DNA from: Octopus sinensis
Lineage: Eukaryota
NCBI RefSeq assembly: GCF_006345805.1
Contig: NC_042998.1
Span: forward strand, 89,404,001 to 89,468,000
Direction of reading: 5' to 3'
DNA length: 64,000 nt
Below are positions 6,437 through 56,374 of the stretch, piece by piece (position 1 is the first letter of the stretch; the number at the start of each line of letters is the position of its first letter). The position numbers and the translations under genes are program-made. A model generated the notes under the pieces. It had not been told where the DNA came from and did no database searches. It was given only the letters and a program-made list of their open reading frames with translations.

Positions 6437-6494
<58 letters not shown>
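6437..6494 (+). repeat. (TAA)n microsatellite opening the + strand Dong train
   Basis: Perfect trinucleotide run; further runs at 7051-7134, 9280-9315, 10425-10500, 10786-10832, 11388-11509. Confidence 0.98.
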
Positions 6495-6495
<1 letters not shown>

Positions 6496-6496
<1 letters not shown>

Positions 6497-7050
6497 GCCG
6501 TGATGCAGTGCCAGGCAGTGGCTCTCATGGCTGCTGATCTTAACTGATTGGAAGTGTTATCATGTACATTGTTTTGTCTTGGCATAAAAGATAGGCTACA
6601 GCAAATATTCTGCTCAATACCGCAGATTTGCTTGTCAGTTGTTTGACCGTAACCAGTTGAGCATGTCCCTTGGTGGCTGACGATATGTGCATCTCTGATC
6701 ATGAGCAGAAGTAGTGGGGGAGCATCATAGCCGTGTGTTAAAAGGAATTCTTAGAGGTTTGGATAGTTCACCTTTAGAAACAGGGGTGGTTCGTTCAACA
6801 TCCTTAAACAATCCTTATTTAGGGACCTTTTGAGCGGGATGGGTTACTCGACCAGATGAAAATTCTAACTGGGCCCTACCTGCAAGATCATGCACTGTTT
6901 ATCTTGATATGAGATTACAATGTCGCACACATATGGTTGTGATGCATGTGCCTGCTGTACATTTATCATACGGGTGATCATGATGGGTATACTAGGCTTC
7001 GTATATTTTACCCCAGTGTCACTTTGATGGCATGCATTGCTGTCTCACTC
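6496..7050 (+). mobile_element. 555-bp non-coding interspersed element flanked by (TAA)n, copy 1
   Basis: Collinear (~90% identity by eye) with 10833-11387; identical 5' (TGCC.TGATGCAGT) and 3' (CTCACTC) ends; (TAA)n on both sides. Confidence 0.8.
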
Positions 7051-7135
<85 letters not shown>

Positions 7136-7389
7136 GGAAAATACGCAAGCTGCTGAGTTGTAATAGGATGCACCACCCAAAGGCAGACGTAGATCGCCTT
7201 TACCTTCCCAGAGCCCAAGGAGGTCGAGGCCTGATCCAATTTGAACTAGCTTACAAAACAACCACAATTGGACTGGCCAAATATCTCGAAATATCGAATG
7301 ACTGGATGCTAAAGCTCGTGGAAAATCACGAGAGATGAAAGAAGCTTCATTCTATTATAAAGGAAAGCAAAAAATTTGCTATTGATCTC

Positions 7390-8262
7390 GTGCAGGATAC
7401 CCAAACTGAACAACCCGAGGGAAGTACGGCAACTATTGTTGCAAAGAAGGTGAAAATGATGGTAACGAAAAAAGCGCACGAGCAATTGGCTGATAGGTGG
7501 GAGGAGAAACCTCTGCACGGCAAATATGTGACCCGCAGCAAACAAGCTGATGTTGACCAGAAGCAAACCCATCAGTCGCTACGGAACTCAGGGCTAAAAG
7601 CAGAGAGCGAAGGTTTCATCCTGGCTGCTCAAGATCAAAGCCTATTAACCCGGAACTACCAGGCCAATGTGATGAAAAATGGAGCAGACGCAAAATGCCG
7701 ATTCTGCAACGACATGATTGAAACAGTGGACCACCTAATCTCTGGATGTAAAGTCTTAGCACCAGTGGAGTATAAATTAAGACATGACAGAGTTGGCCAA
7801 TATCTACACTGGCTAATAAGTCGGCATTACAATATCAAAACTGCCGACAAGTGGTATAATCACCACCCTGAGGCTGTAACTGAAGGAGAAAATGTAACCA
7901 TTCTGTGGGACTTTCCAGTACATACAGACCGAACCATCAAGGCCAATAAACCAGATATTGTTGTGAAAGACCAAAGCAACAAAGTTTGCTTATTGATCGA
8001 CATGAGCATACCCTGTGATCATAATATCTCAGCGAAAGAGTTTGACAAGCTCAGAAAATATAAAGACCTACTCATTGAAATTGAGAAAATGTGGCATCTC
8101 AAGGCGGTTACAATACCAGCGATCGTAGGAGCACTAGGAATGATCAAGAAGGGAACCGAAAATTATATGAGAATGATCCCTGGCTTACCATCCCTGCAAG
8201 AAGTGCAAAAGATTGTCTTAACTGGTACATCACACGTATTGAGAAGAGCATTGTCGATGTGA
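7390..8262 (+). pseudogene. CCHC finger + REL endonuclease ORF (290 aa) of Dong family B
   Basis: KPLHGKY, GLKAESEGFILAAQDQ, CRFCNDMIETVDHLISGC, ILWDFPVHTD, KPDIVV, LIDMSIP, KYKDL; premature TGA just upstream (ends ORF 6946-7338). Confidence 0.88.
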
Positions 8263-8370
8263 GAACTGTTGCTGCTCATGTATTTTAATTTAACTTAAAA
8301 AAAAAATAATAAATTTTTTTTTTTTAATGAACGAACTATTGAGTTTGGTTTAATGGCCTACCACTGTATA

Positions 8371-9198
8371 CGAGGGGCGTTCAATAAGTAATGCCCCTGA
8401 CCCACTTCCCATAGCAGTAGGGCAACGAAACTTGGAACAGTTATTAGTCTTTTTCTACATAGGAATCACCCAGAGTTACGCATTTCTCCCATCGTTTGAT
8501 GCAGCTCTGAAGACCGGTTTTGTAGAAGACCCCAGCTTGGTCCTCCAACCACGACGTGACTTCAGAAATCAAGGTTGCATCATCTGGGAAACGCTTTCCT
8601 TTCAAAAACAACTTCATGGCTGGGAAGGGGTGAAAATCAGAGGGTGCAAGGTCAGGAGAGTAGGGGGGATGGGGGATGAGTTCATAGCCGCACGCCTGTG
8701 CTTCTGATCTGGCGACACGCGAGTTGTGGATCGGAGCGTTGTCCTGCAGGAGGAGGATGCCTTTGCTGATCTTGCCCCGCCTCTTGATTTTGATAGCTTC
8801 TCTTAATTTCCTCAAAAGTGAAGCATAATAGACTCCTGTAATTGTGGCACCCTTTGCCAGGAAATCTGTCTTCACTACTCCGTCCTGGTCCCAGAAGACT
8901 GTAAGCATGACCTTGCCAGCGGAGGGCTGCACCCATGCCTTCTTTTGAGGAGGTGAGTCACGGTGCTCCCGTGGTGTGCGTCCTTTCAAATACAAAAACC
9001 GGATCACTGCTCGACACTCGACATGCTCCATTTCACACTTGACTCAGTTCAAACACCTGTAAATCGGAAACCACAATTAGTTCAGAGCTTTAATTTGCCA
9101 CTTCATCTATAGAGATATGAATAATTGCACATGCAAAATTTCAGCTAGATCAAACAACTGCAAGTGGGTCAGGGGCATTACTTATTGAAAGCCCCTCG
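8371..9198 (-). mobile_element. Mariner (Tc1/mariner) internal-deletion derivative, 828 bp, irritans-like
   Basis: 37-bp TIRs (8371-8407, 9162-9198; 1 mismatch), TA duplication at 8369-8370 and 9199-9200; transposase motifs SAGKVMLTVFWD, LLQDNAPIH, HPPYSPDLAPSDF. Subfamily is inferred from TIR and N-terminus resemblance. Confidence 0.93.
8444..9031 (-). pseudogene. In-frame deleted mariner transposase (195 aa)
   Basis: N-terminus MEHVECRAVIRFLYLKGRTPRE fused directly to HRDSPPQKKA..; HTH region, WVPHEL linker and first catalytic Asp are absent. Confidence 0.85.
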
Positions 9199-9315
9199 TA
9201 CTATGAGTTTCTTTGATCTAGGAGTCGGGAAGACACTCGGCAAGAAATGGAAGCAAATTTGAAAGAAGAAAAAAAAAAGTAATAATAATAATAATAATAA
9301 TAATAGTAATAATAA

Positions 9316-9469
9316 AGTTCTCAGTAGAACTGCTACAAAAGGCCAGAATAATTAGGAAAGCATTAGACAGCTGAAAAGAACAAATAGTATGATACCGCAG
9401 GCTGCAGGCAGTAAGCCCGCTACGCATGCAAGACTCCAGGAACTTCAACAAAACCTGTGATAAAGAGAA
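9316..9469 (+). mobile_element. Short 3' end of Dong family D between TAA tracts
   Basis: Homologous to the 3' end of 9482-10385 (GGCTGCAGG..CATGCAAGA.TCCAGG..ACCTGTGATAAAGAGAA) and followed by AATAATAA. Confidence 0.75.
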
Positions 9470-9481
9470 AATAATAATAAT

Positions 9482-10385
9482 GATACACCCAAACATTGCT
9501 AGTGACAGTTAGGAACGAGGGAGTATTGAGATAAAAGAAAAAGGGAAAACAAAGAAAGAAGTACATGAAGAAAAATTACGCAAGAAGGCACTACACAAAC
9601 AATTCCATGTAACCACAACAGAAGTTGCTGGAAAAAATCAGGTGGATTTGGTTGATGAAAGGAACTCTAAAAAAAAGAGACTGAGAGCACTATACTGGCA
9701 GTGCAGAACCAAGCTTTGGCCACCTGGGGAATGAGCAAGTGTCTCCGCTGTGTCGCATCTGCAATAGAGTGGTATAAACCATTGCCCATATCACGAATGA
9801 ATGTTCAGGACTTGTCCAAAACCACTACGAGTTGTGGCAACACGACCAGGTAGCGAAAGTGCTACATTGGAAACTGTGCGAAAAGTGGGGGCTAGAGAGA
9901 GGCAAGAATGTGTGGCGGAGTCGGAGACTAGCAAAATCCTCTGGGATTTTCGAATCCAAACAGTTCAGGCGCAAGAGAATAACAGACCAGACCTAGTGAT
10001 GGTGGACAAGGTACACCACATATGCTATACAGTTCATGTTGAATACCCTTTTGACCAATCAATAATCACGAAGGAAGGTGAAAAGATAGATAAATACAAC
10101 CTTCTTAAGTAGAAAATAGCCTGAATAGGGAAAATGAAGAAGGTGAAGATAATGCCAATTATTGTTGGATCTTTGGGAATAGCATCAGAGGGCATCAAGA
10201 AGGATATAAAGGAAATTGCAATACAGTACCCAGTAGACCTGCTACAAAAGGTTTGCTTCCTTGTCTCAGCAAAGTATTATGATAGCTGAAAAGGACGAAA
10301 AGCAGGGTACCATAGGCTGCAGGTAGCAAGACTGTGACGCATGCAAGATTCCAGGAGCTCCAATAAAACCTGTGATAAAGAGAAA
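9482..10385 (+). mobile_element. Degenerate 5'-truncated R4/Dong element (family D)
   Basis: Decayed finger CRICNRVV.TIAHITNEC and REL KILWDFRIQT..NRPDLVMVDK..EKIDKY (ORF 9801-10112); followed by CAA/TAA repeats. Confidence 0.8.
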
Positions 10386-10423
10386 ATAATAGCAACAACA
10401 ACAACAACAACAATAAAAAATAA

Positions 10424-10479
<56 letters not shown>

Positions 10480-10500
10480 TAATAATAATATAATAATAAT

Positions 10501-10782
10501 AGGTAACTAGAATGTGGAATCTGAAAACAGAAACAATTCCTATCATAGTAGGTGCATTAGGCATGATAAAAAAATATTCAGACAAATACATAACAAAAAC
10601 ACCAGGACTTAGAAACACATATAACATACAGAAAATTGCACTACTAGGCACTGCACACATCCTACGCAGAACACTTTCCATACAATAACCATCAGAGCAT
10701 CACAACAAATCACAGCACATACCCAAGGCACACAGAGCTGCGCTCGGTAGTGAAGTGAAAGCACGCTATAAAAATAAAACTA

Positions 10783-10785
<3 letters not shown>
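10501..10785 (+). mobile_element. 3' fragment of Dong family A between TAA tracts
   Basis: Nearly identical (about 3 differences seen) to the reverse complement of 41036-41320. Confidence 0.92.
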
Positions 10786-10832
<47 letters not shown>

Positions 10833-10834
<2 letters not shown>

Positions 10835-11387
10835 CCCTGATGCAGTACCAGGCAGTGGCTCTCATGGCTTCTGATCTTAACTGATTGGAAGTGTTATCAT
10901 GTATATTGTTTTGTCTTGGTATAAAAGATGGGCTACAGCAAATATTCTGCTCAATACCACAGATTTGCTTGTCAGTTGTTTGACCTTAACCAGTTGAGCA
11001 TGTCCCTTAGTGGCTGGCGATATGTGCATCTCTGATCACGAGCAGAAGTAGTGGGGGAGCATCATAGCCATGTGTTGAGAGGGATTCTTTGGGGTTTGAA
11101 TAGTTCACCTCTGGAAACATGGGTGGTTCGTTCAACATCCTTAAGCAACCCTTATTCAGGGACCATTTGAGCGGGATGGGCTACTCAACCTGAAGAAAAT
11201 TCTAACTGGGCCCCACCTGCAAGGTCATGTGCTGTTTATCTTGATATGAGATCACCATGTCGCGCACATATGGTTGTGATGCATGTGCCTGGTGTACCTT
11301 TATCAGACGGGTAGTCATGATGGGTATATTGGGCTTCGTATATTTTACCCCAGTGTCACTTTGATGGCATGAACTGCTCTCTCACTC
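10833..11387 (+). mobile_element. 555-bp non-coding interspersed element flanked by (TAA)n, copy 2
   Basis: Same length and ends as 6496-7050; (TAA)n at 10786-10832 and 11388-11509. Confidence 0.8.
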
Positions 11388-11510
<123 letters not shown>

Positions 11511-11894: not shown

Positions 11895-12520
11895 AATTTC
11901 CGAAGAAACTTTGTTTGCTGTAAATAATAATAAAGCATTCAAGGGACATCTCTGGTGGAATTCGAGGTGCATGTCTGCTGGTATCAGTGGAATTCTTGGA
12001 ATAAACACATTTTATCCCTTTCCTTGTCCAGTGAGGATTGTTGCTTCCAAAAGATGTGGATGCATTTGCCTGACAATCAGTCTTGTTCCATTGCACAGCT
12101 TTGGAGGATCCAGATTTCTCAAAAGAATTACTGGAATTCCTTTCTCCAATGTCAATTTATGAGAATGAATTCCAAGAGAATCCAAAGAATTAAGAAACTC
12201 AGTAGGAGGGTCCACATCAGTATCAATTGAGAAATAATCTTTTTCCTTAGTATTGATTGATTGCATAAGTTTCCAATTGACAATCAAGACAGTTTCACTA
12301 TTTGGCGCAAGTATGGCTCTTTCACAAAGCTAATCATGATCTTGAAAATCATGTCCAATGTATAGCCTTGGTAATAAACTCGTCTACAGTTTTGTCCAAA
12401 ATTTCACTGCCATTTGGAAAAGTGATGTCTACATTATTGTCTTGTTGAATGCTTCCATTTCCCAGATCCAGTAGCTTAGCTGTAAATCTTCCAGTATCCA
12501 AATCTCTGAATAAACTGACT
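11895..12520 (-). mobile_element. Helitron PIF1-like helicase fragment
   Basis: EFLNSLD..HKLTLEKGIPVILLRNLDPPKLCNGTRLIV..EATILTGQGKG*NVFIPRIPLIP and upstream LLDLGNG; these are typical Helitron RepHel helicase motifs, here with stops and frameshifts. Confidence 0.85.
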
Positions 12521-15756: not shown

Positions 15757-15816
<60 letters not shown>

Positions 15817-15821
15817 CATTA
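15521..15821. repeat. (TACA)n and (ATT)n microsatellites (other TACA runs at 33735-33775, 50894-50958, 60446-60517, 61690-61735)
   Basis: Direct reading. Confidence 0.95.
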
Positions 15822-16391
15822 TAGTCAAAAAATGGAGTGAGCTGATGGAATCATTAGAGTATCGGGGAAAATGCGCTGCAGAAGTTCTTGCGGCTCTTTA
15901 CACTTTGAGTTTAAATCCCCACCGAGATCAATTTTGTCTTTCACTCTTTCGGGATCGATAAAACAAATTATGATTAGTACAGGGATCGATGGTTTTGACT
16001 AATCCTCTCTCATCAAAATCAGAGACTATTTATAATCCCGGTCACAATCATCATCATAATCACCAACGCCATAAATATTGCACTATTATCATCATCTTTA
16101 TTGTTGTTGTTATAAATGTCATCCCCACAAAATTATTCTCGTATTTATAATATTAGGCTACTTGAGAAAATATGGTCGCAAAAATTATAGTATTTAGATA
16201 ATCATTTATTAAATGTTTTCTAACATCGGCCCAATACCGGAAATTTGGTGTGGAGGAGTTCGTCTGTTACATCTATCTTCAATTCTTCACTGTTACTTTA
16301 TTTTATGATCCCGGAAAGGATGGGAAGTACATTTGATATAGGCGGCTTTTGAACTCAAAACGTAAAGAGCCGAGACAAATAATACAAGAAT

Positions 16392-39014: not shown

Positions 39015-39830
39015 GCTCTTTTAACTCAGGTTTTGTTCTAACTCTTGACATCTTGTATGATTAGTGTTCTTGCTACCTGTAGCCGATAGTACCATGCTAT
39101 TTTTTCTCTTCAACTACCTTATACTTTGCTGATAATCTCAGACTTATCAAAGAGGTAAAATTTTGGTCACACCTCTAGTAGACATTCTATTTCCATTTTC
39201 CTTATGTTCCTCTCGGTATCTCTTGATACAATAATCGGCATTATCTTTATCTTTTCCATGTTCCACAGTCGGGATATTTCATATTTAAGAGGCTTGTACC
39301 CGCTTACTTCCGCCTCTTTGTTCTTAACTATCCATGAGTCAAATGGGCATGCAATATTAATTACAGAGCACACATGGTGTACTTTGACTGCCACCAATAA
39401 GTCTGGTTTGCTGTGATGAAGCACCTGGTTCGTTTGAAGCACCTGTGTGTTTTGTGGTCGTACCATGGCTTACCACCCTCTAAACTCGTTTCATGAAGTT
39501 TCCGGTGCAGAACTTTTACTTCCTCAACATGTCGCCACAACTTATATTGATTTTGAGCAAGTGCAAGACATTAATTTACGATATGAATAGTAGCTTCATC
39601 AAAACTTTTACATATTCGGCACACCGGATACACACATTGCTAAAACTCGCACTCCGATTTGTGGCCAAAGCATGGTTATACAAGTATAGTACTCCCAGTC
39701 TCCTTATCAAGTACTCCTCTCTTTAACCAGTCCCATCTCTATTTTCCAGCAGCTTCTGTTGTGACCTCATGAAATCTTTTGTATAAACCCTTCTCGAGTA
39801 GTACTTCATCATGTCTTTCTTGTACATCTA
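39015..39830 (-). mobile_element. Degenerate R4/Dong fragment (family D-like)
   Basis: CRICKSFDEATIHIVN finger remnant; REL SKPDLLVAVK..NIACPFD (ORF 39167-39466); 3' UTR resembles that of family D. Confidence 0.75.
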
Positions 39831-39977
39831 GTTTACCATTATTGTTATTATCATTATCATTTTATTGTCTTTGCACAGCTTCTAACGCTGGAGATGTACT
39901 ACGATGTCATCTGTTCACTACCAGTGAATTAAGGTAATACCCCTTATTTTTCGAGCACATATAATTATCATTATTAT

Positions 39978-40490
39978 ATGAAAACTCACAGCTTATTTTG
40001 CTGAGTATGATGGAAAGTGACAGCTGTCCACACCCAGCAGACTAAGGTGAGACTTGTATACTGGTCATACTTCAAGAAAGAACCCTGCGAAGAATTTTTG
40101 TAGGTTCTACCTTCACACTTGCACCGATCTTTTCCAGCCATGCTGGTAGTTGAGTGCTGATACTTCCAAGTGCACCAGTTACTACTGGTATCACGTCTAC
40201 TCTCTTCATTGACCATAACTTTCGTATTTCCCACTTCAAATCGTCACGATTGTTGTTTATTTGTTTCTTCTTCTTTCAAATTGATCCTGTTGTCACCGGG
40301 GCATGCTGTGTCGATTATTATACATGTTCTTTCTCTTGTATTCCCCACAACAATGTCCGGTTTCCTATGTCTGGTCGGTTTATCGCACTGGATCATTGCA
40401 TCCCACAGAATTTTGCAATTCTCATTTTCGGTGACTCCTTCTGAAGTTTGCTCATACCAAGTCTTTGCTCTTTGTAGACCGTGATTCCAC
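39978..40490 (-). mobile_element. 5'-truncated R4/Dong fragment (family C)
   Basis: WYE..EGVTENENCKILWDAMIQCD..HRKPDIVV..IIDTACPGD in ORF 40244-40597; its 5' junction abuts a (GAT)n tract. Confidence 0.82.
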
Positions 40491-40533
40491 ATCATCATCA
40501 TCATCATCATCATCATCGTCGTCATCGTCATCG

Positions 40534-40568
<35 letters not shown>

Positions 40569-40675
40569 TCCATCGTCATCGTCACCGTCATCGTCATCGT
40601 CGTCGTCGTGGTCGTCCTCCTCGTCGTCGTTGTCGTTGTCTTTGTTGTTGTTGTTGTTATTATTATTATTATTAT
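40491..40675. repeat. Compound (ATC)/(GTC)/(GTT)/(ATT) microsatellite
   Basis: Direct reading. Confidence 0.93.
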
Positions 40676-40886
40676 CTTTTTTTTCTTCTTCTTTCAAATT
40701 TGCTTCCATTTCTTGCCGATTGTTTTCCCGACTCCTAGGGCAAAGAAACTCATAGTATACATTGGTAGGCCATTAAACTAAACTCACTAGTTCGTTCATT
40801 TAAAAAAAAAATTTAAATTAAAATACATGGGTAGTAATAGTTCTCACATCGACAATACTCTTCTCAATACGTGTGATGTACCAGTT
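40676..40886 (-). mobile_element. 3' end of Dong family B (empty site for the mariner at 8371)
   Basis: Reverse complement matches 8221-8370 joined to 9201-9279, with a single TA (40756-40757). Confidence 0.9.
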
Positions 40887-40916
40887 AATAATAATAATAA
40901 TAATATAATAATAATA

Positions 40917-40955
<39 letters not shown>

Positions 40956-40980
40956 GCTATTGTTATTATTATTATTATTA

Positions 40981-41035
<55 letters not shown>
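40887..41035. repeat. (AAT)n/(ATT)n microsatellite with an internal orientation switch
   Basis: (AAT)n 40887-40917 followed directly by (ATT)n 40918-41035. Confidence 0.95.
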
Positions 41036-41038
<3 letters not shown>

Positions 41039-41132
41039 TAGTTTTATTTTTATAGTGTGCTTTCACTTCACTACCGAGCGCAGCTCTGTGTGCCTTGGGT
41101 ATGTGCTGTGAGTTGTTGTGATGCTCTGATGG

Positions 41133-43358
41133 TTATTGTATGGAAAGTGTTCTGCGTAGGATGTGTGCAGTGCCTAGTAGTGCAATTTTCTGTATGTTAT
41201 ATGTGTTTCTAAGTCCTGGTGTTTTTGTTATGTATTTGTCTGAATATTTTTTTATCATGCCTAATGCACCTACTATGATAGGAATTGTTTCTGTTTTCAG
41301 GTTCCACATTCTAGTTACCTCTATTTCCAGGTCTTTGTATTTTGAGAGTTTCTCCATTTCTTTTAGAGACACGTTGTCATCAGCCGGTATTGATACATCA
41401 ATTAGAAAGCATTTTTTTTCTTCATGGTCTCTGACAACTATATTTGGTCTGTTGGCCTTAATTTCTCTATCTGTGTGTATCGGCATATCCCAGAGTATGG
41501 TTGCTTTCTCGTTTTCTGTGACCTTTTCTGGTGTGTGCCTATACCATCTTTTTTCTGTTGTTATTCCATAATGTTGGCATAGCTTCCAATGTATGTAGGT
41601 TCCAACTCTGTCATGTCTGTGAATATATTCCTTCTTAGCCAGGACTGGGCAGCTAGAGATAATATGATTTATTGTTTCTTGTCCATCTCCACATATTCTG
41701 CAGTTACTTGTAATATTTCTTTTCATTACATGTTTTTGGTAATTTCTGGTGGGGAGGCTTTGGTCTTGTGCTGCAATTAAAAATCCCTCTGTTTCTGCTT
41801 TGAGTCCTGAGCTTCTCAACCATTGCTGGGATTTTTCTTTGTCTATTTCTTTTGCGTTTAGTTTAGTCCAGTATTTACCATGAAGGGGTTTTTCTTGCCA
41901 TCGTTTTATCATGGCTCGTTGCTGTTCTATTTTTAGTTTGGATTTCATTTGTTTTATAGCTTTTGTTGTTTCTTCATCATCTTCTTCTTCTTCTTTGTGT
42001 TTATTAGGTGGTATGATTTCTTGTTTGTATTTGTCAGCTTCCTTAAATACTGAGAACAGTTTTTTGTTTTGCTCGTGTTTTGCTGCTATCTGGATCAGTT
42101 TTCCTTCCTTCTGAAGTAGGTATTTTTGCAGTCCTATGGTGGTTCTTTTATAGTAGTTTTCCAGCTGTATAAGGCCTCTACCACCTATACGTTGTATATA
42201 TAGTCTTTCTATGTCAGATTTTGGGTGATGCATCCTAGATCCTTTCAGTATTTTTCTTGTTTTCCTATCTATTTTGGACAGTTCATTTCGTGTCCAGTTA
42301 AGGATATTGTAGCTGTAACTTATAACTGGGACAGCTAAAGCGTTGATACCTATTATCTTGTTTTTAGCATTGAGCTCTGTGTTTAGTATTGATCTAACTC
42401 GTCTATAATATTCTTTTTTTATTTTCTCTTTCATTTGTGTGTGTTGTGTCTTATCTAGTTCATGGATTCCTAAGTATTTGTAAGTTTGGCTTTGGTCTAA
42501 TTCTTTTATTTCATTGGTTTTATCTAGTGTGATGTTGTTACTCTTAACTAGTTTTCCTCTTTTCATGGTTACTTTGGCGCATTTTTCTAATCCAAATTTC
42601 ATATCTATTTCTTTGGTAAATCCATGAACTGTCTTTAATAGTGTTTCCAGCTGTTTGTCATTTGCAGCGTATAGTTTTAGGTCATCCATATATAAAAGGT
42701 GGCTGATCGTTTTGCCGTAACATTTATATCCGCATCCAGTTCTATTTAGCATATCAGATAGAGGTGACAGTGCCAAGCAGAAAAGGAGTGGAGAGAGCGT
42801 GTCTCCCTGGAATATTCCTCTTCTAATGGGGATGTCTTTGGTTTTCATGAGTCCTTCTTTTGTTTGGAGGTGTAGGACTGTTTGCCATTTATTCATAGAG
42901 TGCTCTATGAATGTTATGATTGTTGGTGCTACTTTGTTAATGGCTAGTGTTTCGAGGATCCATGTGTGGGGGATGCTATCAAACGCCTTTTTGTAGTCAA
43001 TCCAGGCCATACTGCGGCCTTTCTTCTTTCTGTGGCGGTCTTCAGTTACGGCTTTATTAATCATTAGTTGATCTTTACAGCCATATGAGCCTTTGCGGCA
43101 TCCTTTCTGCTCTTCTGGGAACAGTTTGTTTTCGTCCAGGTGCTTGTTCAGCCTTTGCGATATCACTGCAGTAAATGCCTTGAACATAGTAGGGAGGCAG
43201 GTTATTGGTCTGTAGTTTTCTGGTTTTGTTGTTTCATTTGATTTGGGAATTAAGATGGTTTTCCCCTTCGTGAACCATTCAGGCATTGTCTCTGGCTCTG
43301 CTAGTATGCTGTTAAAGTTTTCAGCCAGCTTTTTGTGCATTCCTGTTAGATATTTCAA
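41133..43358 (-). pseudogene. pol: RT-zinc finger-REL endonuclease ORF (741 aa fragment) of Dong family A
   Basis: RT motifs NYRPITCL, QKGCRKG, WIDYKKAFDS, GIFQGDTLSPLLF, YMDD, FGLEKC, YKYLG; R4-type HHPKSDIERLY..GGRGL; CCHC finger CRICGDGQETINHIISSC; REL region ILWDMPIHTD..RPNIVV..LIDVSIP..EKLSKYKDL. Separated from upstream coding pieces by an in-frame TGA and a frameshift. Confidence 0.92.
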
Positions 43359-43480
43359 CCAGAAGTTGGGGATCTTGTCATGCCCAGGTGCCTTCCAGTT
43401 GCTTAGTTTTTGCAGTGCCTGGGTGACCTCTTCAGTTGTTATGGGGGTTCAAAGTTGTTCAGATGCCGAGTTTGTTATTT

Positions 43481-44771
43481 TCATACTCCTTTCTTTGGCT
43501 GTTCGTTCGCCGACCATATTTCTTTCCAGAATTCTTCCAATTCTTCTGCCGTTGGTGCTGCAGTGACTTCTATTTTATTTTTGCCCAGTTCTTGGTAGAA
43601 CTTTTTGGGGTCGGAGTTGAACTTTTTGTTCTGTTCAAAGAAGCGTTGGCGTTTCTCGTACCGGCGGATCCTTTGAGCTTTGGCAAGGATATCTTGCTTC
43701 AGCTTTTCTTTTATCTCCGGCAAATCTTTTTCTGTGATGTTATATTTGCGGAGCATTTTTGTTCTCTTTTTGTTGCTCAGTAGCGTTACTTGTTTGCTGA
43801 TTTCATTAAGAATCGACAGGTCTTTTCTAATTTTTTTAATTTTGTTTTGGATGTTATTTATCCACAGGGTTTGTTTGGGTGGTGGTACTCCGGTTTGGGC
43901 GGGTTTGGGTGAGTATCCAGCTTCTTTTGTGGCTGCAGTGGCTGCTGCGTATATCAAGTCATTTAGTTCAGTGATATCACTTTTTTTGTTTCAGTGGCTA
44001 GTTCAGTGACGGCTAGGTTTATGTTGTTTATAATTGGTGTTGTTATTGCGTTTATTTTTATTCTTGGGAGGTATGGTCGGTAGTCCATTTTGAGCTCTGT
44101 GGTTTTCAGTTCTTTGATTATTTTATTTTTATATTATCATAATCATTAGGCTCCCCTTCGTTGTTTACATCGTATTTGTTGGGAATGTTGCGTTTGTCTT
44201 CGTGTTTTACAGTTTCAGTGTTTATATTATTGGGCATTGTTGTGTGGCTTCTATCTACATTTTCTTGGTGTATTTTTTCTTTTAAATGTTCTATTTCTAT
44301 TTCTGATATTTTTTTGGCTTTGAGAATGAATCTTCGTACGTTAGCTAATTTATTAGGGTTCATTGCTGTATCCAAGTCTATATCTCTGTTATTTTCCTTC
44401 CATATTTTATATGTATGTGTTGTTGTATTTTCATTTTGTGGGTAGAGCATTGCTGTGAAGTATGCGTGTAAGATAGAAATGTATTCCTCACGTGTCCATT
44501 TACGTCTTTTGGGTTTTAATTGCGGGACATGAGGTACAACGTCCGGCCCATTATTTTGACGGTCGTCATTTTCGTAGGGTACCGGTCCGTTTATTTCTGT
44601 TGTCACATTATTTCGCACGTGTAGTTTTTCGTACATTTTTTGTTGTAGGTTTAATGTACGTACCGCTCGATTGTTATTCTTGGGTTGAATAGTATCGGTG
44701 GCATTTAATTTCTTCGTAGTTCCTTTGTACATGGTGTTTGAGGTCGGGGATGATCGTGTTGTTCCACGCAT
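43481..44771 (-). pseudogene. N-terminal coding region of Dong family A (two frameshifted pieces)
   Basis: RRKWTREE..NKLANVRRFI (44118-44771) and W..IQNKIKKIRKD..AQRIRRYEKRQRFFEQNKKF..FYQEL..EEFWKEIWS (43481-43957) resemble the pre-RT region of R4-clade proteins; frameshift in an A-rich run near 44120. Confidence 0.8.
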
Positions 44772-45040
44772 GTTTACATGTGTTGTGTTAGAGGTGGAGA
44801 TAATATCGAGTCAAAATACATCATTTCGTTTCGAAAATAGTAATAAATTTCAATTCGTATTACTTACTCGGATATAGTCCAATTCTTTGTTAGTAAATCT
44901 TTGGCTCCATAGGGTGTCCTTGTTTTCGATGTTTGTGGATAGATTTCGGAGCTCTGTATTTTCCTTCTTACATCTTAAACGTCCCCGGTGTCTTCCCTTA
45001 AACGTCCCCGGTGTCTTCCCTTAAACGTCCCCGGTGTCTT

Positions 45041-45066
45041 TCTTCTTCTTCTTCTTCTTCTTCTTC

Positions 45067-45122
<56 letters not shown>
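45041..45122. repeat. (TTC)n + (TTA)n microsatellite at the 5' end of Dong A
   Basis: Direct reading. Confidence 0.97.
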
Positions 45123-53639: not shown

Positions 53640-53950
53640 GTCTATGGCATCATCTATGGCATCATGCTGCTTGTGTCTGCTCTGAATCATCTGCAGCCTC
53701 AATTGATAGACTTACTAAAGAAATAGAATGTCTCACCAAAAGGATGAACGCGATGTGTCGCGATGGCAAGCGATTTTCAAGATCGCGTAGTCGTAGCCGT
53801 TCTTCATCTCGTTCTACACAGTCAAAGTCCAAACTGTGTTGGTATCACTCAAAATTTGAAGAGAAAGCACATAAGTGCATACAGCCATGCAACTATAAAA
53901 GATTTCAAAGAGGAGTTGAGCACGTCAACTTCCTCCACATCGTTTTCTAG
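53640..53950 (+). pseudogene. gag: Gag C-terminal remnant with CHCC motif
   Basis: RSRSRSRS..LCWYHSKFEEKAHKCIQPC; the N-terminal capsid region appears missing. Confidence 0.8.
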
Positions 53951-56374
53951 TTATCGTGCATTTTTCGTTAAGGATCTAGTGTCGAAGAAATACTTCATGG
54001 TGGACACTGGTTCTTGTTGCAGTATTTGGCCTCTGCGTCTCACAACCGACAGGCCAAAACGATCTAATGTTACCTTGCAAGCTATTGACTCGTCACCAAT
54101 AGCCACATTCGGTCAAATCACTTTACGCCTTGGCATACATCTTCGTCGAGATTTTCAGTGGGTTTTTGTCATTGCTGACATTCCGCATCCTATTTTAGGT
54201 GCGGATTTTCTAAATAACTTTGATCTATTGGTAGATGTCAGACGTCGGAGGCTAGTCGACGGTTCAACTACACTCTCCACGCCGACCAGAGAATCTACCG
54301 ATTCAGCTCTTAGCCCGACATTTTTTGTTTCTACATCTGGAGATGTTTTTCATTCTCTATTGGCTTCTTTTCCAGAGCTACTTGATATTACCTTTAAAAT
54401 GGCAAAACCCGTACACTCGACATTCCATCTTATTACAACTACTGGACAGCCTGTTTTTTCGCGCCCACGGCATCTTGCACCTGACCGTCTTAAAACGGCT
54501 AGGGCTGAGTTTGAGCATATGCTCCAGCTTGGTCTGATACGCCCATCCACCAGTCCATGGGCATAACCCCTTCATTTAGTTCGAAAAGGGGATACAGATT
54601 TTCGCTCGGTGGGAGATTATCGGCGTCTAAATTCTGTGACGATTCCGGACAGATATCCAATTAGGAATCTCAATGACTTTTCAGCGAATCTTCATGGCTG
54701 TACCATTTTTTCTAAGGTTGACCTCATACGTGCTTATCATCAAATACCGGTCAACCCAGACGATGTTCCTAAAACGGCAATTACCACTCCTTTTGGTTGT
54801 TTCGAATTTCTATACATGAGTTTTGGTTTGCGGAACGCCACTAGTACATTCCAACGTTTTATAGATGAAGTTATTCGTGGACTTGATTTTGTTTTTGCGT
54901 ATGTCGATGATATTCTCATCGCAAGTGATACGCATGAAAATCATCTCCAGCACTTGTCTCAGCTTTTTCAGCGTCTTCGCGACTATGGTGTTCGCTTTAA
55001 TCCAGACAAGTGCGTTTTTGGGCAATCATCTCTTGATTTTCTCGGTCATTATATTGATTCGAGTGAAATCAAACCACTCTCGTCTAAAGTCGATGCAATT
55101 CAGCGCATCGCACCACCTTCTTCTTTGCGTAATTTCTATCGACGCTTCATATACCGGTGTGCGGACAAGTTGTTTCCTTTAAAGAAGATGCTAAAGGGCA
55201 ATTCTAAAAAGGATGCCCGTCGTACTCTTTCAGCTGAAGCACTGCCTGCCTTTGAGTTAGTTAAAAAGGAACTAGCTTCAGTTCCTGTTTTAGCACATCC
55301 GGCTCCTGATGCTCCACTTACTTTATCTGTGGACGCATCAGATTCTGCAGTTGGCGCTGTCTTGCAGCACACCGTAGATGGTGAAACTAAACCTTTGGCT
55401 TTCTTTTCTCCTAGACCGTTAGTACCTGAGAAACATCAACGTTCTGTTTTTGATGCTCTTCATTCATTGTCACATCCGGGTATCTCTGCCACAGTAAAGC
55501 TTGTTACTGCTCGGTTCTTCTGGCCCAATATGCGACAATCGATTACCTCTTGGGCACGCTCTTGTTTGAGATGCCGGAGTGCTAAAGTCCATAGACACGT
55601 TCGTGCTCCACTTGGACAGTTTTCTTCTCCTGAGGCCCGTTTTCGTCATGTCCACCTTGATTTGGTTGGACCATGGCCTGTGAGTCGCGGGTTCTCATAT
55701 ATTTTAACTTGTATCGATCGTTTCTCACGTTGGCCGGAAGCTATTCCTATAGAAGACATTTCTGCTGAAACTGTTGCGAAAGCTTTCGTGTCTAATTGGA
55801 TTTCTAGGTATGGTGTACCGTCCAGTTTAACCACAGATCGTGGTCGACAATTCGAAGCGGTTTTATTTCGTGAGTTATCACGAATCCTGGGGATGCATCA
55901 TATACGCACCACTAGTTACCATCCTGCTTCTAATGGGATGGTGGAGCGTTTCCACAGGCAACTTAAGGCCGCGTTGCGTGCCTCGCCGAATCCACAGTCG
56001 TGGACTGAATGTCTTCCTATCGTCCTGCTTGGATGTCGGACTGCGATTAAAGCAGACCTTGGTTTTTCTTCTGCCGAGCTCTTGTATGGTACCAACTTGA
56101 CATTAACGGTCGTTCGGAGACCGTATCCGTAGATCGTCTTAAAAGGGCATATTTTGAGGTGTCCACATCTTTTGATGACCCCACTGCCACAACCATCGTT
56201 GAACCTTCACATGCACCTTTGACAACACCACCATTTACACATGCACCTTTATCAACACCAACATCGGCAACACCACCTTCGTCGTCGCAGCCCGCTTCGA
56301 ACAAACCTTATGTTACGAGGTCAGGCAGAACTGTTCACTGGCCAAAGAAACTTTCAAAGACGATTTATATTTGA
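53763..56374 (+). pseudogene. pol: Pol (protease, RT, partial RNase H, integrase) with premature stop and deletions
   Basis: PR FMVDTGS and ILGADFL; TAA at 54564-54566 in PWA*P; [30 protein letters not shown]; RH only [18 protein letters not shown]; [37 protein letters not shown]; C-terminal [14 protein letters not shown] in another frame. Confidence 0.93.

What the first reader, a model, noticed from the sequence alone, without database searches (positions are those of the whole stretch)
6496..7050. 555-bp non-coding element with fixed ends: candidate TAA-targeted non-autonomous partner of Dong
Two copies (6496-7050 and 10833-11387) are exactly 555 bp, about 90% identical, with the same first and last base, each bounded by (TAA)n and co-oriented with Dong. 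Random 5' truncation of a LINE would not give identical 5' ends. About 10% divergence argues against a very recent local duplication, and the neighbouring inserts differ. I see no ORF and no convincing tRNA A/B box pair. Inference: a SINE-like element that borrows Dong target-primed reverse transcription and microsatellite specificity, possibly with a non-tRNA promoter or self-processed 5' end.
Basis: partly seen in the sequence, partly recalled or inferred. Interest (0 to 1): 0.8.

Follow-up and report, generated by a model that had tools for sequence, protein, structure and literature searches.

The report
Non-coding retroposon nesting in octopus TAA repeats
The two 555-bp copies are real members of a non-coding mobile-element family of octopus genomes that ends in TAA repeats and sits with Dong retrotransposons in TAA microsatellites, so it is most likely a freeloader on the Dong machinery: useful repeat annotation, not a new principle.

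Summary
Copies 6496-7050 and 10833-11387 are both 555 bp, align without gaps at 91.7% identity, and are flanked on both sides by pure (TAA)n. They lie in one TAA array with four 5'-truncated Dong-like LINE fragments, all in the same orientation.

The element has no coding signal, no tRNA or Rfam match, no terminal inverted repeats and no similarity to the window's Dong families.

Translating its accidental ORFs identified nine Octopus bimaculoides "uncharacterized proteins" that are translations of other copies. The window is therefore probably from an octopus and the family is dispersed. In those copies the 3' end is at nt 555 followed by (AAT)5-11. The 5' ends lie at nt 1 or at about nt 16, 46 and 86. 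One truncated copy sits directly behind (AAT)5 after another copy.

This is the signature of target-primed reverse transcription into TAA arrays by a unit-length non-autonomous element.

Not supported:
- A strict SINE: there is no Pol III head, and TTTT runs occur inside the element.
- A 5' ribozyme.
- A Dong-derived tail.

The Dong partnership is inferred, not shown. The genome-wide copy census could not be run.

The parts
6437..6494 (.). (TAA)19 array upstream of copy A; left edge of the whole nested TAA locus (unique DNA lies before 6437)
   Evidence: TRF 100% matches; sequence
6496..7050 (+). Copy A of the 555-bp non-coding element (the more diverged copy)
   Evidence: polarised differences
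7051..7135 (.). (AAT)28 tail/target array after copy A
7136..9279 (+). 5'-truncated Dong-like LINE, family 2. C-terminal ORF at 7390-8262 carries the CCHC and KPD..D..K endonuclease motifs. Its 3' UTR is interrupted by a mariner-like transposon at about 8372-9200 (minus strand).
9280..9315 (.). (TAA)12 array between inserts
9316..9480 (+). Short 5'-truncated 3' end of Dong-like family 3
   Evidence: 78% identity to 10220-10391; sequence
9485..10395 (+). Longer 5'-truncated Dong-like family 3 copy, with degraded endonuclease-region ORFs
10426..10501 (.). (ATA)26 array
10502..10785 (+). 284-bp 5'-truncated Dong-like family 1 copy, 99.1% identical to the long copy at 41320-41036, so a recent insertion
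10786..10832 (.). (AAT)16 array upstream of copy B
10833..11387 (+). Copy B of the 555-bp element (closer to the O. bimaculoides copies)
11388..11509 (.). (AAT)41 array after copy B; right edge of the nested TAA locus
41036..45040 (-). Near full-length Dong-like LINE, family 1: reverse transcriptase plus a C-terminal R2-type endonuclease, with the reading frame broken into three ORFs. It lies between (TAA)n arrays. It represents the kind of autonomous element proposed as the partner.

Best explanation
The 555-bp sequence is the unit-length copy of a non-coding, non-autonomous retroposon family of octopus genomes.

Proposed mechanism:
1. Its RNA carries a 3' (UAA)n tail.
2. A Dong-type LINE protein (reverse transcriptase plus R2-type endonuclease), made by an autonomous element elsewhere, nicks the (TTA)n strand of a TAA microsatellite.
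3. The tail pairs with the nicked repeat.
4. The RNA is copied in place by target-primed reverse transcription.
5. Complete copying gives 555-bp inserts starting at nt 1. Aborted copying gives 5'-truncated inserts.

Each insert brings or leaves TAA repeats on both sides, so the same array is hit again and again. That builds nests such as 6437-11509.

Shown: the anatomy, the multi-copy status, the fixed 3' end with TAA tail, the mix of full-length and truncated 5' ends, and co-residence and co-orientation with Dong.

Inferred: the RNA intermediate, that Dong (rather than another LINE) supplies the enzymes, recognition through the tail alone, and that the 5' end is set by a transcription start. 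A Pol II-type internal promoter is my guess. Pol III and an HDV-like ribozyme are disfavoured.
For: (1) Two gap-free 555-bp copies at 91.7% identity, each with pure (TAA)n on both sides, in the same orientation as four Dong-like fragments in one array.

(2) The five truncated Dong fragments in the window all have different lengths, whereas the two element copies have identical ends.

(3) No coding capacity. No internal ORF exceeds 50 codons, pN/pS is 0.85-1.0 in the most open frames, there is no Pfam hit, and there is no tblastn similarity to the window's Dong proteins.

(4) The family is dispersed. Nine O. bimaculoides UniProt models are translations of other copies, at 66-92% amino-acid identity to A or B.

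(5) In both O. bimaculoides models that cross the 3' end, similarity stops at nt 555 and is followed by N5 or N11, i.e. (AAT)n.

(6) Observed 5' ends:
- nt 1 in A and B, and in P0124 within 3 nt;
- about nt 16 in P0125;
- about nt 46 in P0126;
- about nt 86 in the second copy inside P0127. That copy directly follows (AAT)5 behind another copy's 3' end. This is a second, independent tandem pair with a different truncation point.

(7) Autonomous candidates are present and recently active. Dong-like family 1 aligns to R2 proteins through the endonuclease, and its two copies are 99.1% identical. O. vulgaris has 1129 recently active Dong-R4 insertions (PMC13282606). Dong is known to target (TAA)n, including in a mollusc (PMC3812793).

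(8) The three Dong families here share no 3' UTR sequence with each other, only the TAA tail. Lack of tail similarity therefore does not exclude the element as a client.

(9) The 5' junction phase differs by 1 nt between A and B. Polarised differences are 17 on the A lineage against 7 on the B lineage (p=0.064). Both points lean towards two separate insertions.
Against: - No DNA of any copy outside the window could be obtained. All outside evidence comes from protein translations of gene models, which may be spliced.
- Three O. bimaculoides models leave the element at the 5' side into sequence that is not a TAA repeat: P0125 into unique sequence, P0126 into CA/TG-like sequence, and P0124 into at most one TAA unit. 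TAA targeting is therefore not demonstrated for every copy.
- No sequence similarity to any Dong 5' or 3' UTR in the window.
- No promoter or processing signal was identified that would explain the fixed 5' end.
- A and B alone could be a tandem duplication by unequal crossover between TAA arrays. The asymmetry test is not significant (p=0.064).
Confidence: 0.6

Rival explanations
1. It is only the 3' portion (long 3' UTR) of an unseen longer LINE family, Dong or another. Under this reading nt 1 is a hot spot for aborted reverse transcription rather than a true element end.
For: 5'-truncated copies exist (about nt 16, 46 and 86), as for any LINE. P0124 continues six residues past nt 1 into non-repeat sequence that cannot be judged. 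The parent families of O. bimaculoides could not be inspected at DNA level.
Against: Three of six observed 5' ends fall at nt 1. In A and B, TAA repeats, not element sequence, lie upstream. There is no remnant of a Dong C-terminus in any frame of the 5' part. A 3' UTR of 555 nt or more would be two to six times longer than those of the three Dong families here, which are about 96, 185 and 290 nt.
Confidence: 0.13
2. The family is a retroposon with its own (TAA)n tail that inserts at ordinary sites using a LINE that is not TAA-specific. Such a LINE would have a (TAA)n 3' end, as the Drosophila I factor does (from memory, not tested here). The tails then seed TAA arrays, which Dong later colonises, so the association with Dong is secondary.
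For: 5' flanks of P0125 and P0126 are not TAA, and P0124 has at most one unit. The TAA upstream of B and of the second P0127 copy could be the tail of the element in front. The only thing shared with Dong is the tail.
Against: Copy A has (TAA)19 upstream with unique DNA, not another element, before it. Two of the few loci sampled hold two copies in one array (A and B; P0127), which random insertion would very rarely give. The non-TAA flanks come from gene models that may be spliced. No other LINE type with a TAA tail was seen in the window.
Confidence: 0.15
3. In this window, A and B are one insertion duplicated by unequal crossover or replication slippage between the flanking TAA arrays, with Dong elements inserting between them later. 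Equal length then says nothing about a fixed 5' end. This concerns the local pair only and is compatible with the family being a retroposon.
For: Removing the Dong inserts leaves (TAA)n-A-(TAA)n-B-(TAA)n, a plain tandem duplication. The family 1 insert between them is young (99.1% identical to its relative). The A/B divergence of 8.3% fits an older duplication.
Against: The 5' junction differs by one base while the 3' junction is identical. A carries 17 and B 7 of the 24 differences that could be polarised, where 12:12 would be expected (p=0.064). An independent tandem pair in O. bimaculoides has unequal 5' ends, which shows that repeated insertion into one array does happen.
Confidence: 0.15
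4. It is a cut-and-paste DNA element, for example a PIF/Harbinger-type MITE, which duplicates TAA/TTA targets, or a Helitron fragment.
For: TAA is the target duplication of PIF/Harbinger elements (from memory). A Helitron-like helicase fragment lies nearby at 12015-12287.
Against: There are no terminal inverted repeats, and the ends TGCC...CACTC lack Helitron termini. All copies face the same way relative to the TAA strand. 5'-truncated copies with intact 3' ends are a retroposition signature.
Confidence: 0.02

Closest known systems
R2 SIDEs (short internally deleted elements) of Drosophila (Eickbush & Eickbush 2012, PMC3414825)
   Same: Short, non-coding parasites of a site-specific LINE of the R2/R4/Dong superclade. 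They insert at the parent's target site in the parent's orientation by target-primed reverse transcription, with variable 5' junctions.
   Different: SIDEs consist of the parent's 5' HDV-like ribozyme joined to the parent's 3' UTR. Here no ribozyme could be recognised and there is no identity to any Dong UTR in the window. The target is a microsatellite, not rDNA.
Dong, the (TAA)n-specific R4-clade LINE (Bombyx, Anopheles, Biomphalaria; Dong-R4 families of Octopus)
   Same: Same target repeat, same orientation relative to the TAA strand, the same (TAA)n 3' end and the same 5'-truncation behaviour. It lies in the same arrays (PMC3812793, PMC13282606).
   Different: The element has no ORF and no protein or nucleotide similarity to the Dong copies here. 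B. mori Dong has a 5' ribozyme that cleaves exactly at the TAA/Dong junction (PMC3774820). Nothing comparable was detected here.
Classical SINE/LINE pairs, including the tRNA-derived SINEs of cephalopods
   Same: Non-autonomous, a few hundred bp, multi-copy, dependent on a LINE's enzymes, and sharing the LINE's type of 3' tail.
   Different: There is no tRNA, 5S, 7SL or snRNA-derived head. Internal TTTT runs would stop Pol III. At 555 bp it is at the long end for a SINE.
RIME/ingi and NARTc/L1Tc of trypanosomes (from memory)
   Same: Non-coding companions of about 0.3-0.5 kb to a LINE, with defined ends.
   Different: Those are recognisably made of the parent's ends. Here no parent sequence is recognisable.

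Membership tests
SINE in the strict sense (Pol III-transcribed retroposon) | 5' head derived from a tRNA, 5S, 7SL or snRNA gene with an internal promoter | tested here: not met
   ARAGORN finds nothing. Rfam at E<=10 on the element and at gathering threshold on the whole window gives no small-RNA family. By eye, the A-box-like and B-box-like strings are about 270 nt apart and imperfect.
SINE in the strict sense (Pol III-transcribed retroposon) | Transcript body free of Pol III terminators (runs of four or more T) | tested here: not met
   TTTT at nt 77 and 511 in both copies, and at nt 333 in A
SINE in the strict sense (Pol III-transcribed retroposon) | Short, non-coding, multi-copy and dispersed | tested here: met
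   No ORF over 50 codons and pN/pS about 1. Nine O. bimaculoides loci.
SINE in the strict sense (Pol III-transcribed retroposon) | 3' end shared with the partner LINE | tested here: inconclusive
   The (TAA)n tail is shared with all Dong families. The unique 3' region is not shared with the three families in the window. Other octopus Dong families could not be examined.
SIDE (internally deleted derivative of an R2/R4/Dong-type LINE) | HDV-like self-cleaving ribozyme at the 5' end | tested here: inconclusive
   No Rfam ribozyme hit. The 5' folds are no better than shuffles and differ between A and B. No anchored HDV-like architecture is shared by A and B. However, the descriptor has no specificity (it hits 96% of shuffles), and covariance models see pseudoknotted ribozymes poorly. 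Only a cleavage assay decides.
SIDE (internally deleted derivative of an R2/R4/Dong-type LINE) | 3' region identical to the parent's 3' UTR | tested here: not met
   No similarity to the family 1, 2 or 3 UTRs in the window. Parents outside the window are not testable.
SIDE (internally deleted derivative of an R2/R4/Dong-type LINE) | Inserted at the parent's target site, in the parent's orientation, with variable 5' junctions | tested here: met
   (TAA)n on both sides, same strand as Dong. There is an extra A at the 5' junction of A, and truncated copies exist.
5'-truncated copy of a Dong/R4 LINE | Longer copies continue upstream into the LINE's ORF, with 5' ends scattered | tested here: inconclusive
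   Three of six 5' ends are at nt 1 and none is seen to continue into Dong coding sequence. Only translations of eight outside loci were available.
PIF/Harbinger-type MITE or other cut-and-paste element | Terminal inverted repeats | tested here: not met
   The repeat finder shows no inverted repeat between the termini
Dong (identity of the neighbouring LINEs) | Single ORF with RT and a C-terminal CCHC plus PD..D..K (R2-type) endonuclease, no AP endonuclease, inserted in (TAA)n | tested here: met
   RVT_1 and zf-RVT. Aligns to R2 proteins up to residue 712 of 741. No Exo_endo_phos hit in the upstream ORF pieces. TAA arrays at both ends. Clade placement by phylogeny was not done.

The most novel reading that the evidence does not exclude
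A 555-nt non-coding RNA with no sequence relationship to any LINE hijacks a site-specific R2-superclade LINE (Dong) purely through a (UAA)n 3' tail that base-pairs with the nicked microsatellite target. That would mean 'relaxed', tail-only template choice in a clade thought to recognise its own 3' UTR. It would also make TAA microsatellites self-reinforcing landing pads for both the LINE and its parasite. A still more novel sub-case is that the exact 5' end is made by a self-cleaving RNA of a kind not in Rfam.
Probability: 0.3. Interest if true: 0.55.

Novelty: new member of a known kind. Interest (0 to 1): 0.4.

Why it matters
Non-autonomous parasites of site-specific LINEs are rare. The R2 SIDEs are the standard example.

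A client of the microsatellite-specific Dong would show how loosely an R2-type enzyme chooses its template. It would help explain why TAA arrays in octopus genomes grow into multi-kilobase nests of inserts. It would also improve repeat annotation: nine O. bimaculoides "proteins" in UniProt are translations of this element.

Such nests also matter in practice, because they break assemblies and spoil microsatellite markers. It remains a transposable-element family description, not a new biological principle.

Tried and rejected
1. Outside DNA copies. Exact-pattern scans of metagenome, prokaryotic-genome and viral collections with two conserved 20-27-mers found nothing. The look-up of encoding contigs had no DNA for the O. 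bimaculoides models or for exact window ORFs. A full-text search for six element 18-24-mers found nothing.

2. Close relatives of Dong family 1. The best database hits are only about 56% identical, so the host's own Dong copies are not in the protein collection.

3. Coding remnant. The minus frame 0 has only 4-5 stops, but pN/pS is 0.85 and its pieces have no Pfam match. Rejected.

4. Dong-derived sequence. tblastn of the window's Dong proteins against the element gives E>0.1. blastn and nhmmer against the rest of the window give nothing.

5. Ribozyme or structured RNA.
- Rfam gives only chance hits to the TAA repeat itself.
- Fold z-scores for the 5' and 3' segments and whole copy A are +0.44 to -1.73, and whole copy B is -2.18. 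The folds are inconsistent between the copies.
- A home-made HDV-like descriptor matched 96% of shuffles and gave no architecture common to A and B.
- The family 1 Dong 5' end, used as a positive control, was also negative in Rfam, so this negative result is weak.

6. MITE or Helitron. No terminal inverted repeats.

7. Flanks of the O. bimaculoides models. They match nothing in the window.

Full report
**Observation**

The coordinates and the description are correct. Copy A (6496-7050) and copy B (10833-11387) are each 555 bp. They align end to end without a gap and differ at 46 positions: 91.7% identity, 32 transitions and 14 transversions.

Both begin TGCC and end CACTC, and both are bounded on each side by pure trinucleotide arrays:
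- (TAA)19 before A and (AAT)28 after A;
- (AAT)16 before B and (AAT)41 after B.

The 5' junction differs by one base (A has an extra A). The 3' junction is identical. Sensitive searches find no third copy or fragment in the 64 kb.

**Context**

The stretch 6437-11509 is one TAA microsatellite that has been hit repeatedly, always in the same orientation. In order it contains:
- copy A;
- a 5'-truncated Dong-like LINE (family 2, 7136-9279), whose 3' UTR carries a later mariner-like insertion;
- two truncated copies of a third family (9316-9480 and 9485-10395);
- a 284-bp fragment of family 1 (10502-10785);
- copy B.

A nearly full-length family 1 element lies on the minus strand at 41036-45040 between TAA arrays. 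It has RVT_1 and zf-RVT domains and a CCHC plus PD..D..K-type C-terminus, and it aligns to solved R2 proteins through the endonuclease. The family 1 fragment next to B is 99.1% identical to it, so this family moved recently.

The five truncated Dong fragments in the window all have different lengths. The two element copies do not differ in length.

**What the element is not**

- Not coding. It has no internal ORF above 50 codons. The ratio of replacement to silent differences between A and B is about 1 in the most open frames. The pieces of the most open frame, searched separately, have no Pfam match. The window's Dong proteins find nothing in it.
- Not a Pol III product by any detectable criterion. 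ARAGORN and Rfam, at gathering and at permissive thresholds, find no tRNA, 5S, 7SL, snRNA or ribozyme family. TTTT runs at nt 77 and 511 in both copies make it a poor Pol III template.
- Not a cut-and-paste element. There are no terminal inverted repeats.
- Not related in sequence to the 5' or 3' UTRs of the three Dong families in the window. Those families also share nothing with each other except the TAA tail.

**Evidence from outside the window**

No eukaryotic DNA collection was available, and exact-pattern scans of the available collections were empty. I therefore used the element's accidental ORFs as probes.

The 50-codon minus-strand ORF, the minus-strand ORF that reads out through the 5' end, and the plus-strand ORF that reads out through the 3' end together retrieved eight proteins. 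A ninth came from a cluster look-up. All are "uncharacterized proteins" of Octopus bimaculoides. Mapped back by tblastn, they are translations of other copies of this element.

Two conclusions follow:
- The window is probably from an octopus, since these are the only database matches.
- The family is dispersed and multi-copy.

Two published facts fit. Octopus genomes carry Dong-R4 families, with 1129 recent insertions reported in O. vulgaris (PMC13282606). A full-length Dong consensus exists for O. bimaculoides (PMC9115989).

**Ends of the outside copies**

At the 3' side, both models that cross the end stop matching at nt 555. They continue with N5 or N11, which is (AAT)n. With A and B, this makes four of four copies with the same 3' end and a TAA tail.

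| Copy | 5' end | What lies upstream |
|---|---|---|
| A | nt 1 | (TAA)19, then unique DNA |
| B | nt 1 | (AAT)16 |
| P0124 | nt 1 (within 3 nt) | six non-repeat residues |
| P0125 | about nt 16 | unique sequence |
| P0126 | about nt 46 | CA/TG-like sequence |
| P0127, second copy | about nt 86 | (AAT)5, directly behind another copy's 3' end |

P0127 is the most telling. It is a second, independent case of two copies in one TAA array, and there the downstream copy is 5'-truncated. Repeated insertion into one array, not only duplication, therefore occurs.

A fixed 3' end, a preferred full-length 5' end and a scatter of truncated 5' ends are the standard signature of target-primed reverse transcription of a unit-length RNA.

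Caveat: these are gene models, so the points where P0125 and P0126 leave the element could be splice junctions. Their non-TAA flanks keep open the possibility that not every insertion is into TAA.

**Two insertions or one duplication?**

Unequal crossover between TAA arrays could have duplicated a single insert. Two weak observations argue against this:
- The 5' junction phase differs between A and B.
- Of the 24 A/B differences that the O. bimaculoides translations can polarise, 17 fall on the A lineage and 7 on the B lineage, where 12:12 would be expected (p=0.064).

I treat this as leaning towards two insertions of different age, not as proof.

**The 5' end**

B. mori Dong has an HDV-like ribozyme that cleaves exactly at the (TAA)n/Dong junction. 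R2 SIDEs keep such a ribozyme (PMC3774820, PMC3414825).
- There is no Rfam match.
- Folds of the first 80-120 nt are no better than shuffles and differ between A and B.
- A permissive HDV-like descriptor anchored at nt 1 gave no architecture common to both copies, while matching 96% of shuffled controls.

This negative result is weak. The family 1 Dong 5' end, used as a positive control, was equally silent in Rfam. Only a cleavage assay would settle it.

**Conclusion**

The best reading (confidence about 0.6) is a non-autonomous, non-coding retroposon. Its RNA ends in (UAA)n and it is copied into TAA arrays by the enzymes of a Dong-type LINE.

It works like an R2 SIDE or a SINE. It fails the membership tests for both:
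- It has no Pol III head.
- It has no recognisable ribozyme.
- It has no parent-derived tail.

The main rivals can be decided only by a genome-wide census of copies, which the available tools could not run:
- It is the 3' part of an unseen longer LINE.
- It is a TAA-tailed element moved by a different LINE.
- A and B are a purely local duplication.

My literature searches found no description of a non-autonomous partner of a microsatellite-specific LINE. Curated repeat libraries could not be consulted. I therefore rate it a new member of a known kind, with moderate interest.

Noticed in passing
window 8369-9200 (minus strand); empty site at 40755-40757: A mariner-like DNA transposon sits inside the 3' UTR of the Dong-like family 2 copy. 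It has Transposase_1/DDE_3 domains, an ORF at 8444-9031, 39-bp terminal inverted repeats at 8369-8407 and 9162-9200, and a TA duplication. The second family 2 copy, at 40888-40640, shows the uninterrupted site.
   Followed up: partly
window 41133-44771 (minus strand): The long Dong-like family 1 copy is one reading frame of about 1100 codons broken into three ORFs. Its endonuclease motif reads RPN where family 2 has KPD, so this particular copy is probably dead, even though the family moved recently (99.1% identity between copies).
   Followed up: partly
window 44974-45122 (minus strand, 5' end of family 1): The 5' end of the long Dong copy is preceded by (TAA)18 then (GAA)9. The element itself starts with three perfect 23-bp repeats (GACACCGGGGACGTTTAAGGGAA). 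This could be a promoter module or a 5' junction artefact. There is no Rfam ribozyme hit.
   Followed up: partly
window 6496-7050 versus 10833-11387: Differences between A and B are unevenly spread: 10 in nt 1-200, 33 in nt 201-500 and 3 in nt 501-555. Both ends are about half as diverged as the middle. This could reflect constraint on the source gene's ends, or chance.
   Followed up: no
UniProt A0A0L8G4R8, IF61, GKS7, I5U5, H6S8, HJ33, HAP1, IHV3, GJS7 (O. bimaculoides): Nine 50-117-residue 'uncharacterized proteins' of O. bimaculoides are translations of this repeat, on either strand, and are almost certainly not real proteins.
   Followed up: yes
window 39020-45122 (minus strand): A second nested TAA locus holds family 1 (long copy), a family 2 3' end (40888-40640), another Dong-like endonuclease fragment (ORF 40244-40597) and a family 3-like copy (39821-39020). 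It contains no 555-bp element.
   Followed up: partly
window 15760-15822: An uninterrupted (TAT)21 array, which is (TAA)n on the minus strand, has no insert. It is an 'empty' potential target.
   Followed up: no
window 12015-12287 (minus); 53763-56132 (plus); whole window: Other mobile-element remains are present: a Pif1-2B helicase fragment (Helitron-like) and a Ty3/gypsy-type pol (RT, RNase H, integrase). The window is extremely rich in simple repeats (114 TRF rows in 64 kb) and no host gene was recognised.
   Followed up: partly
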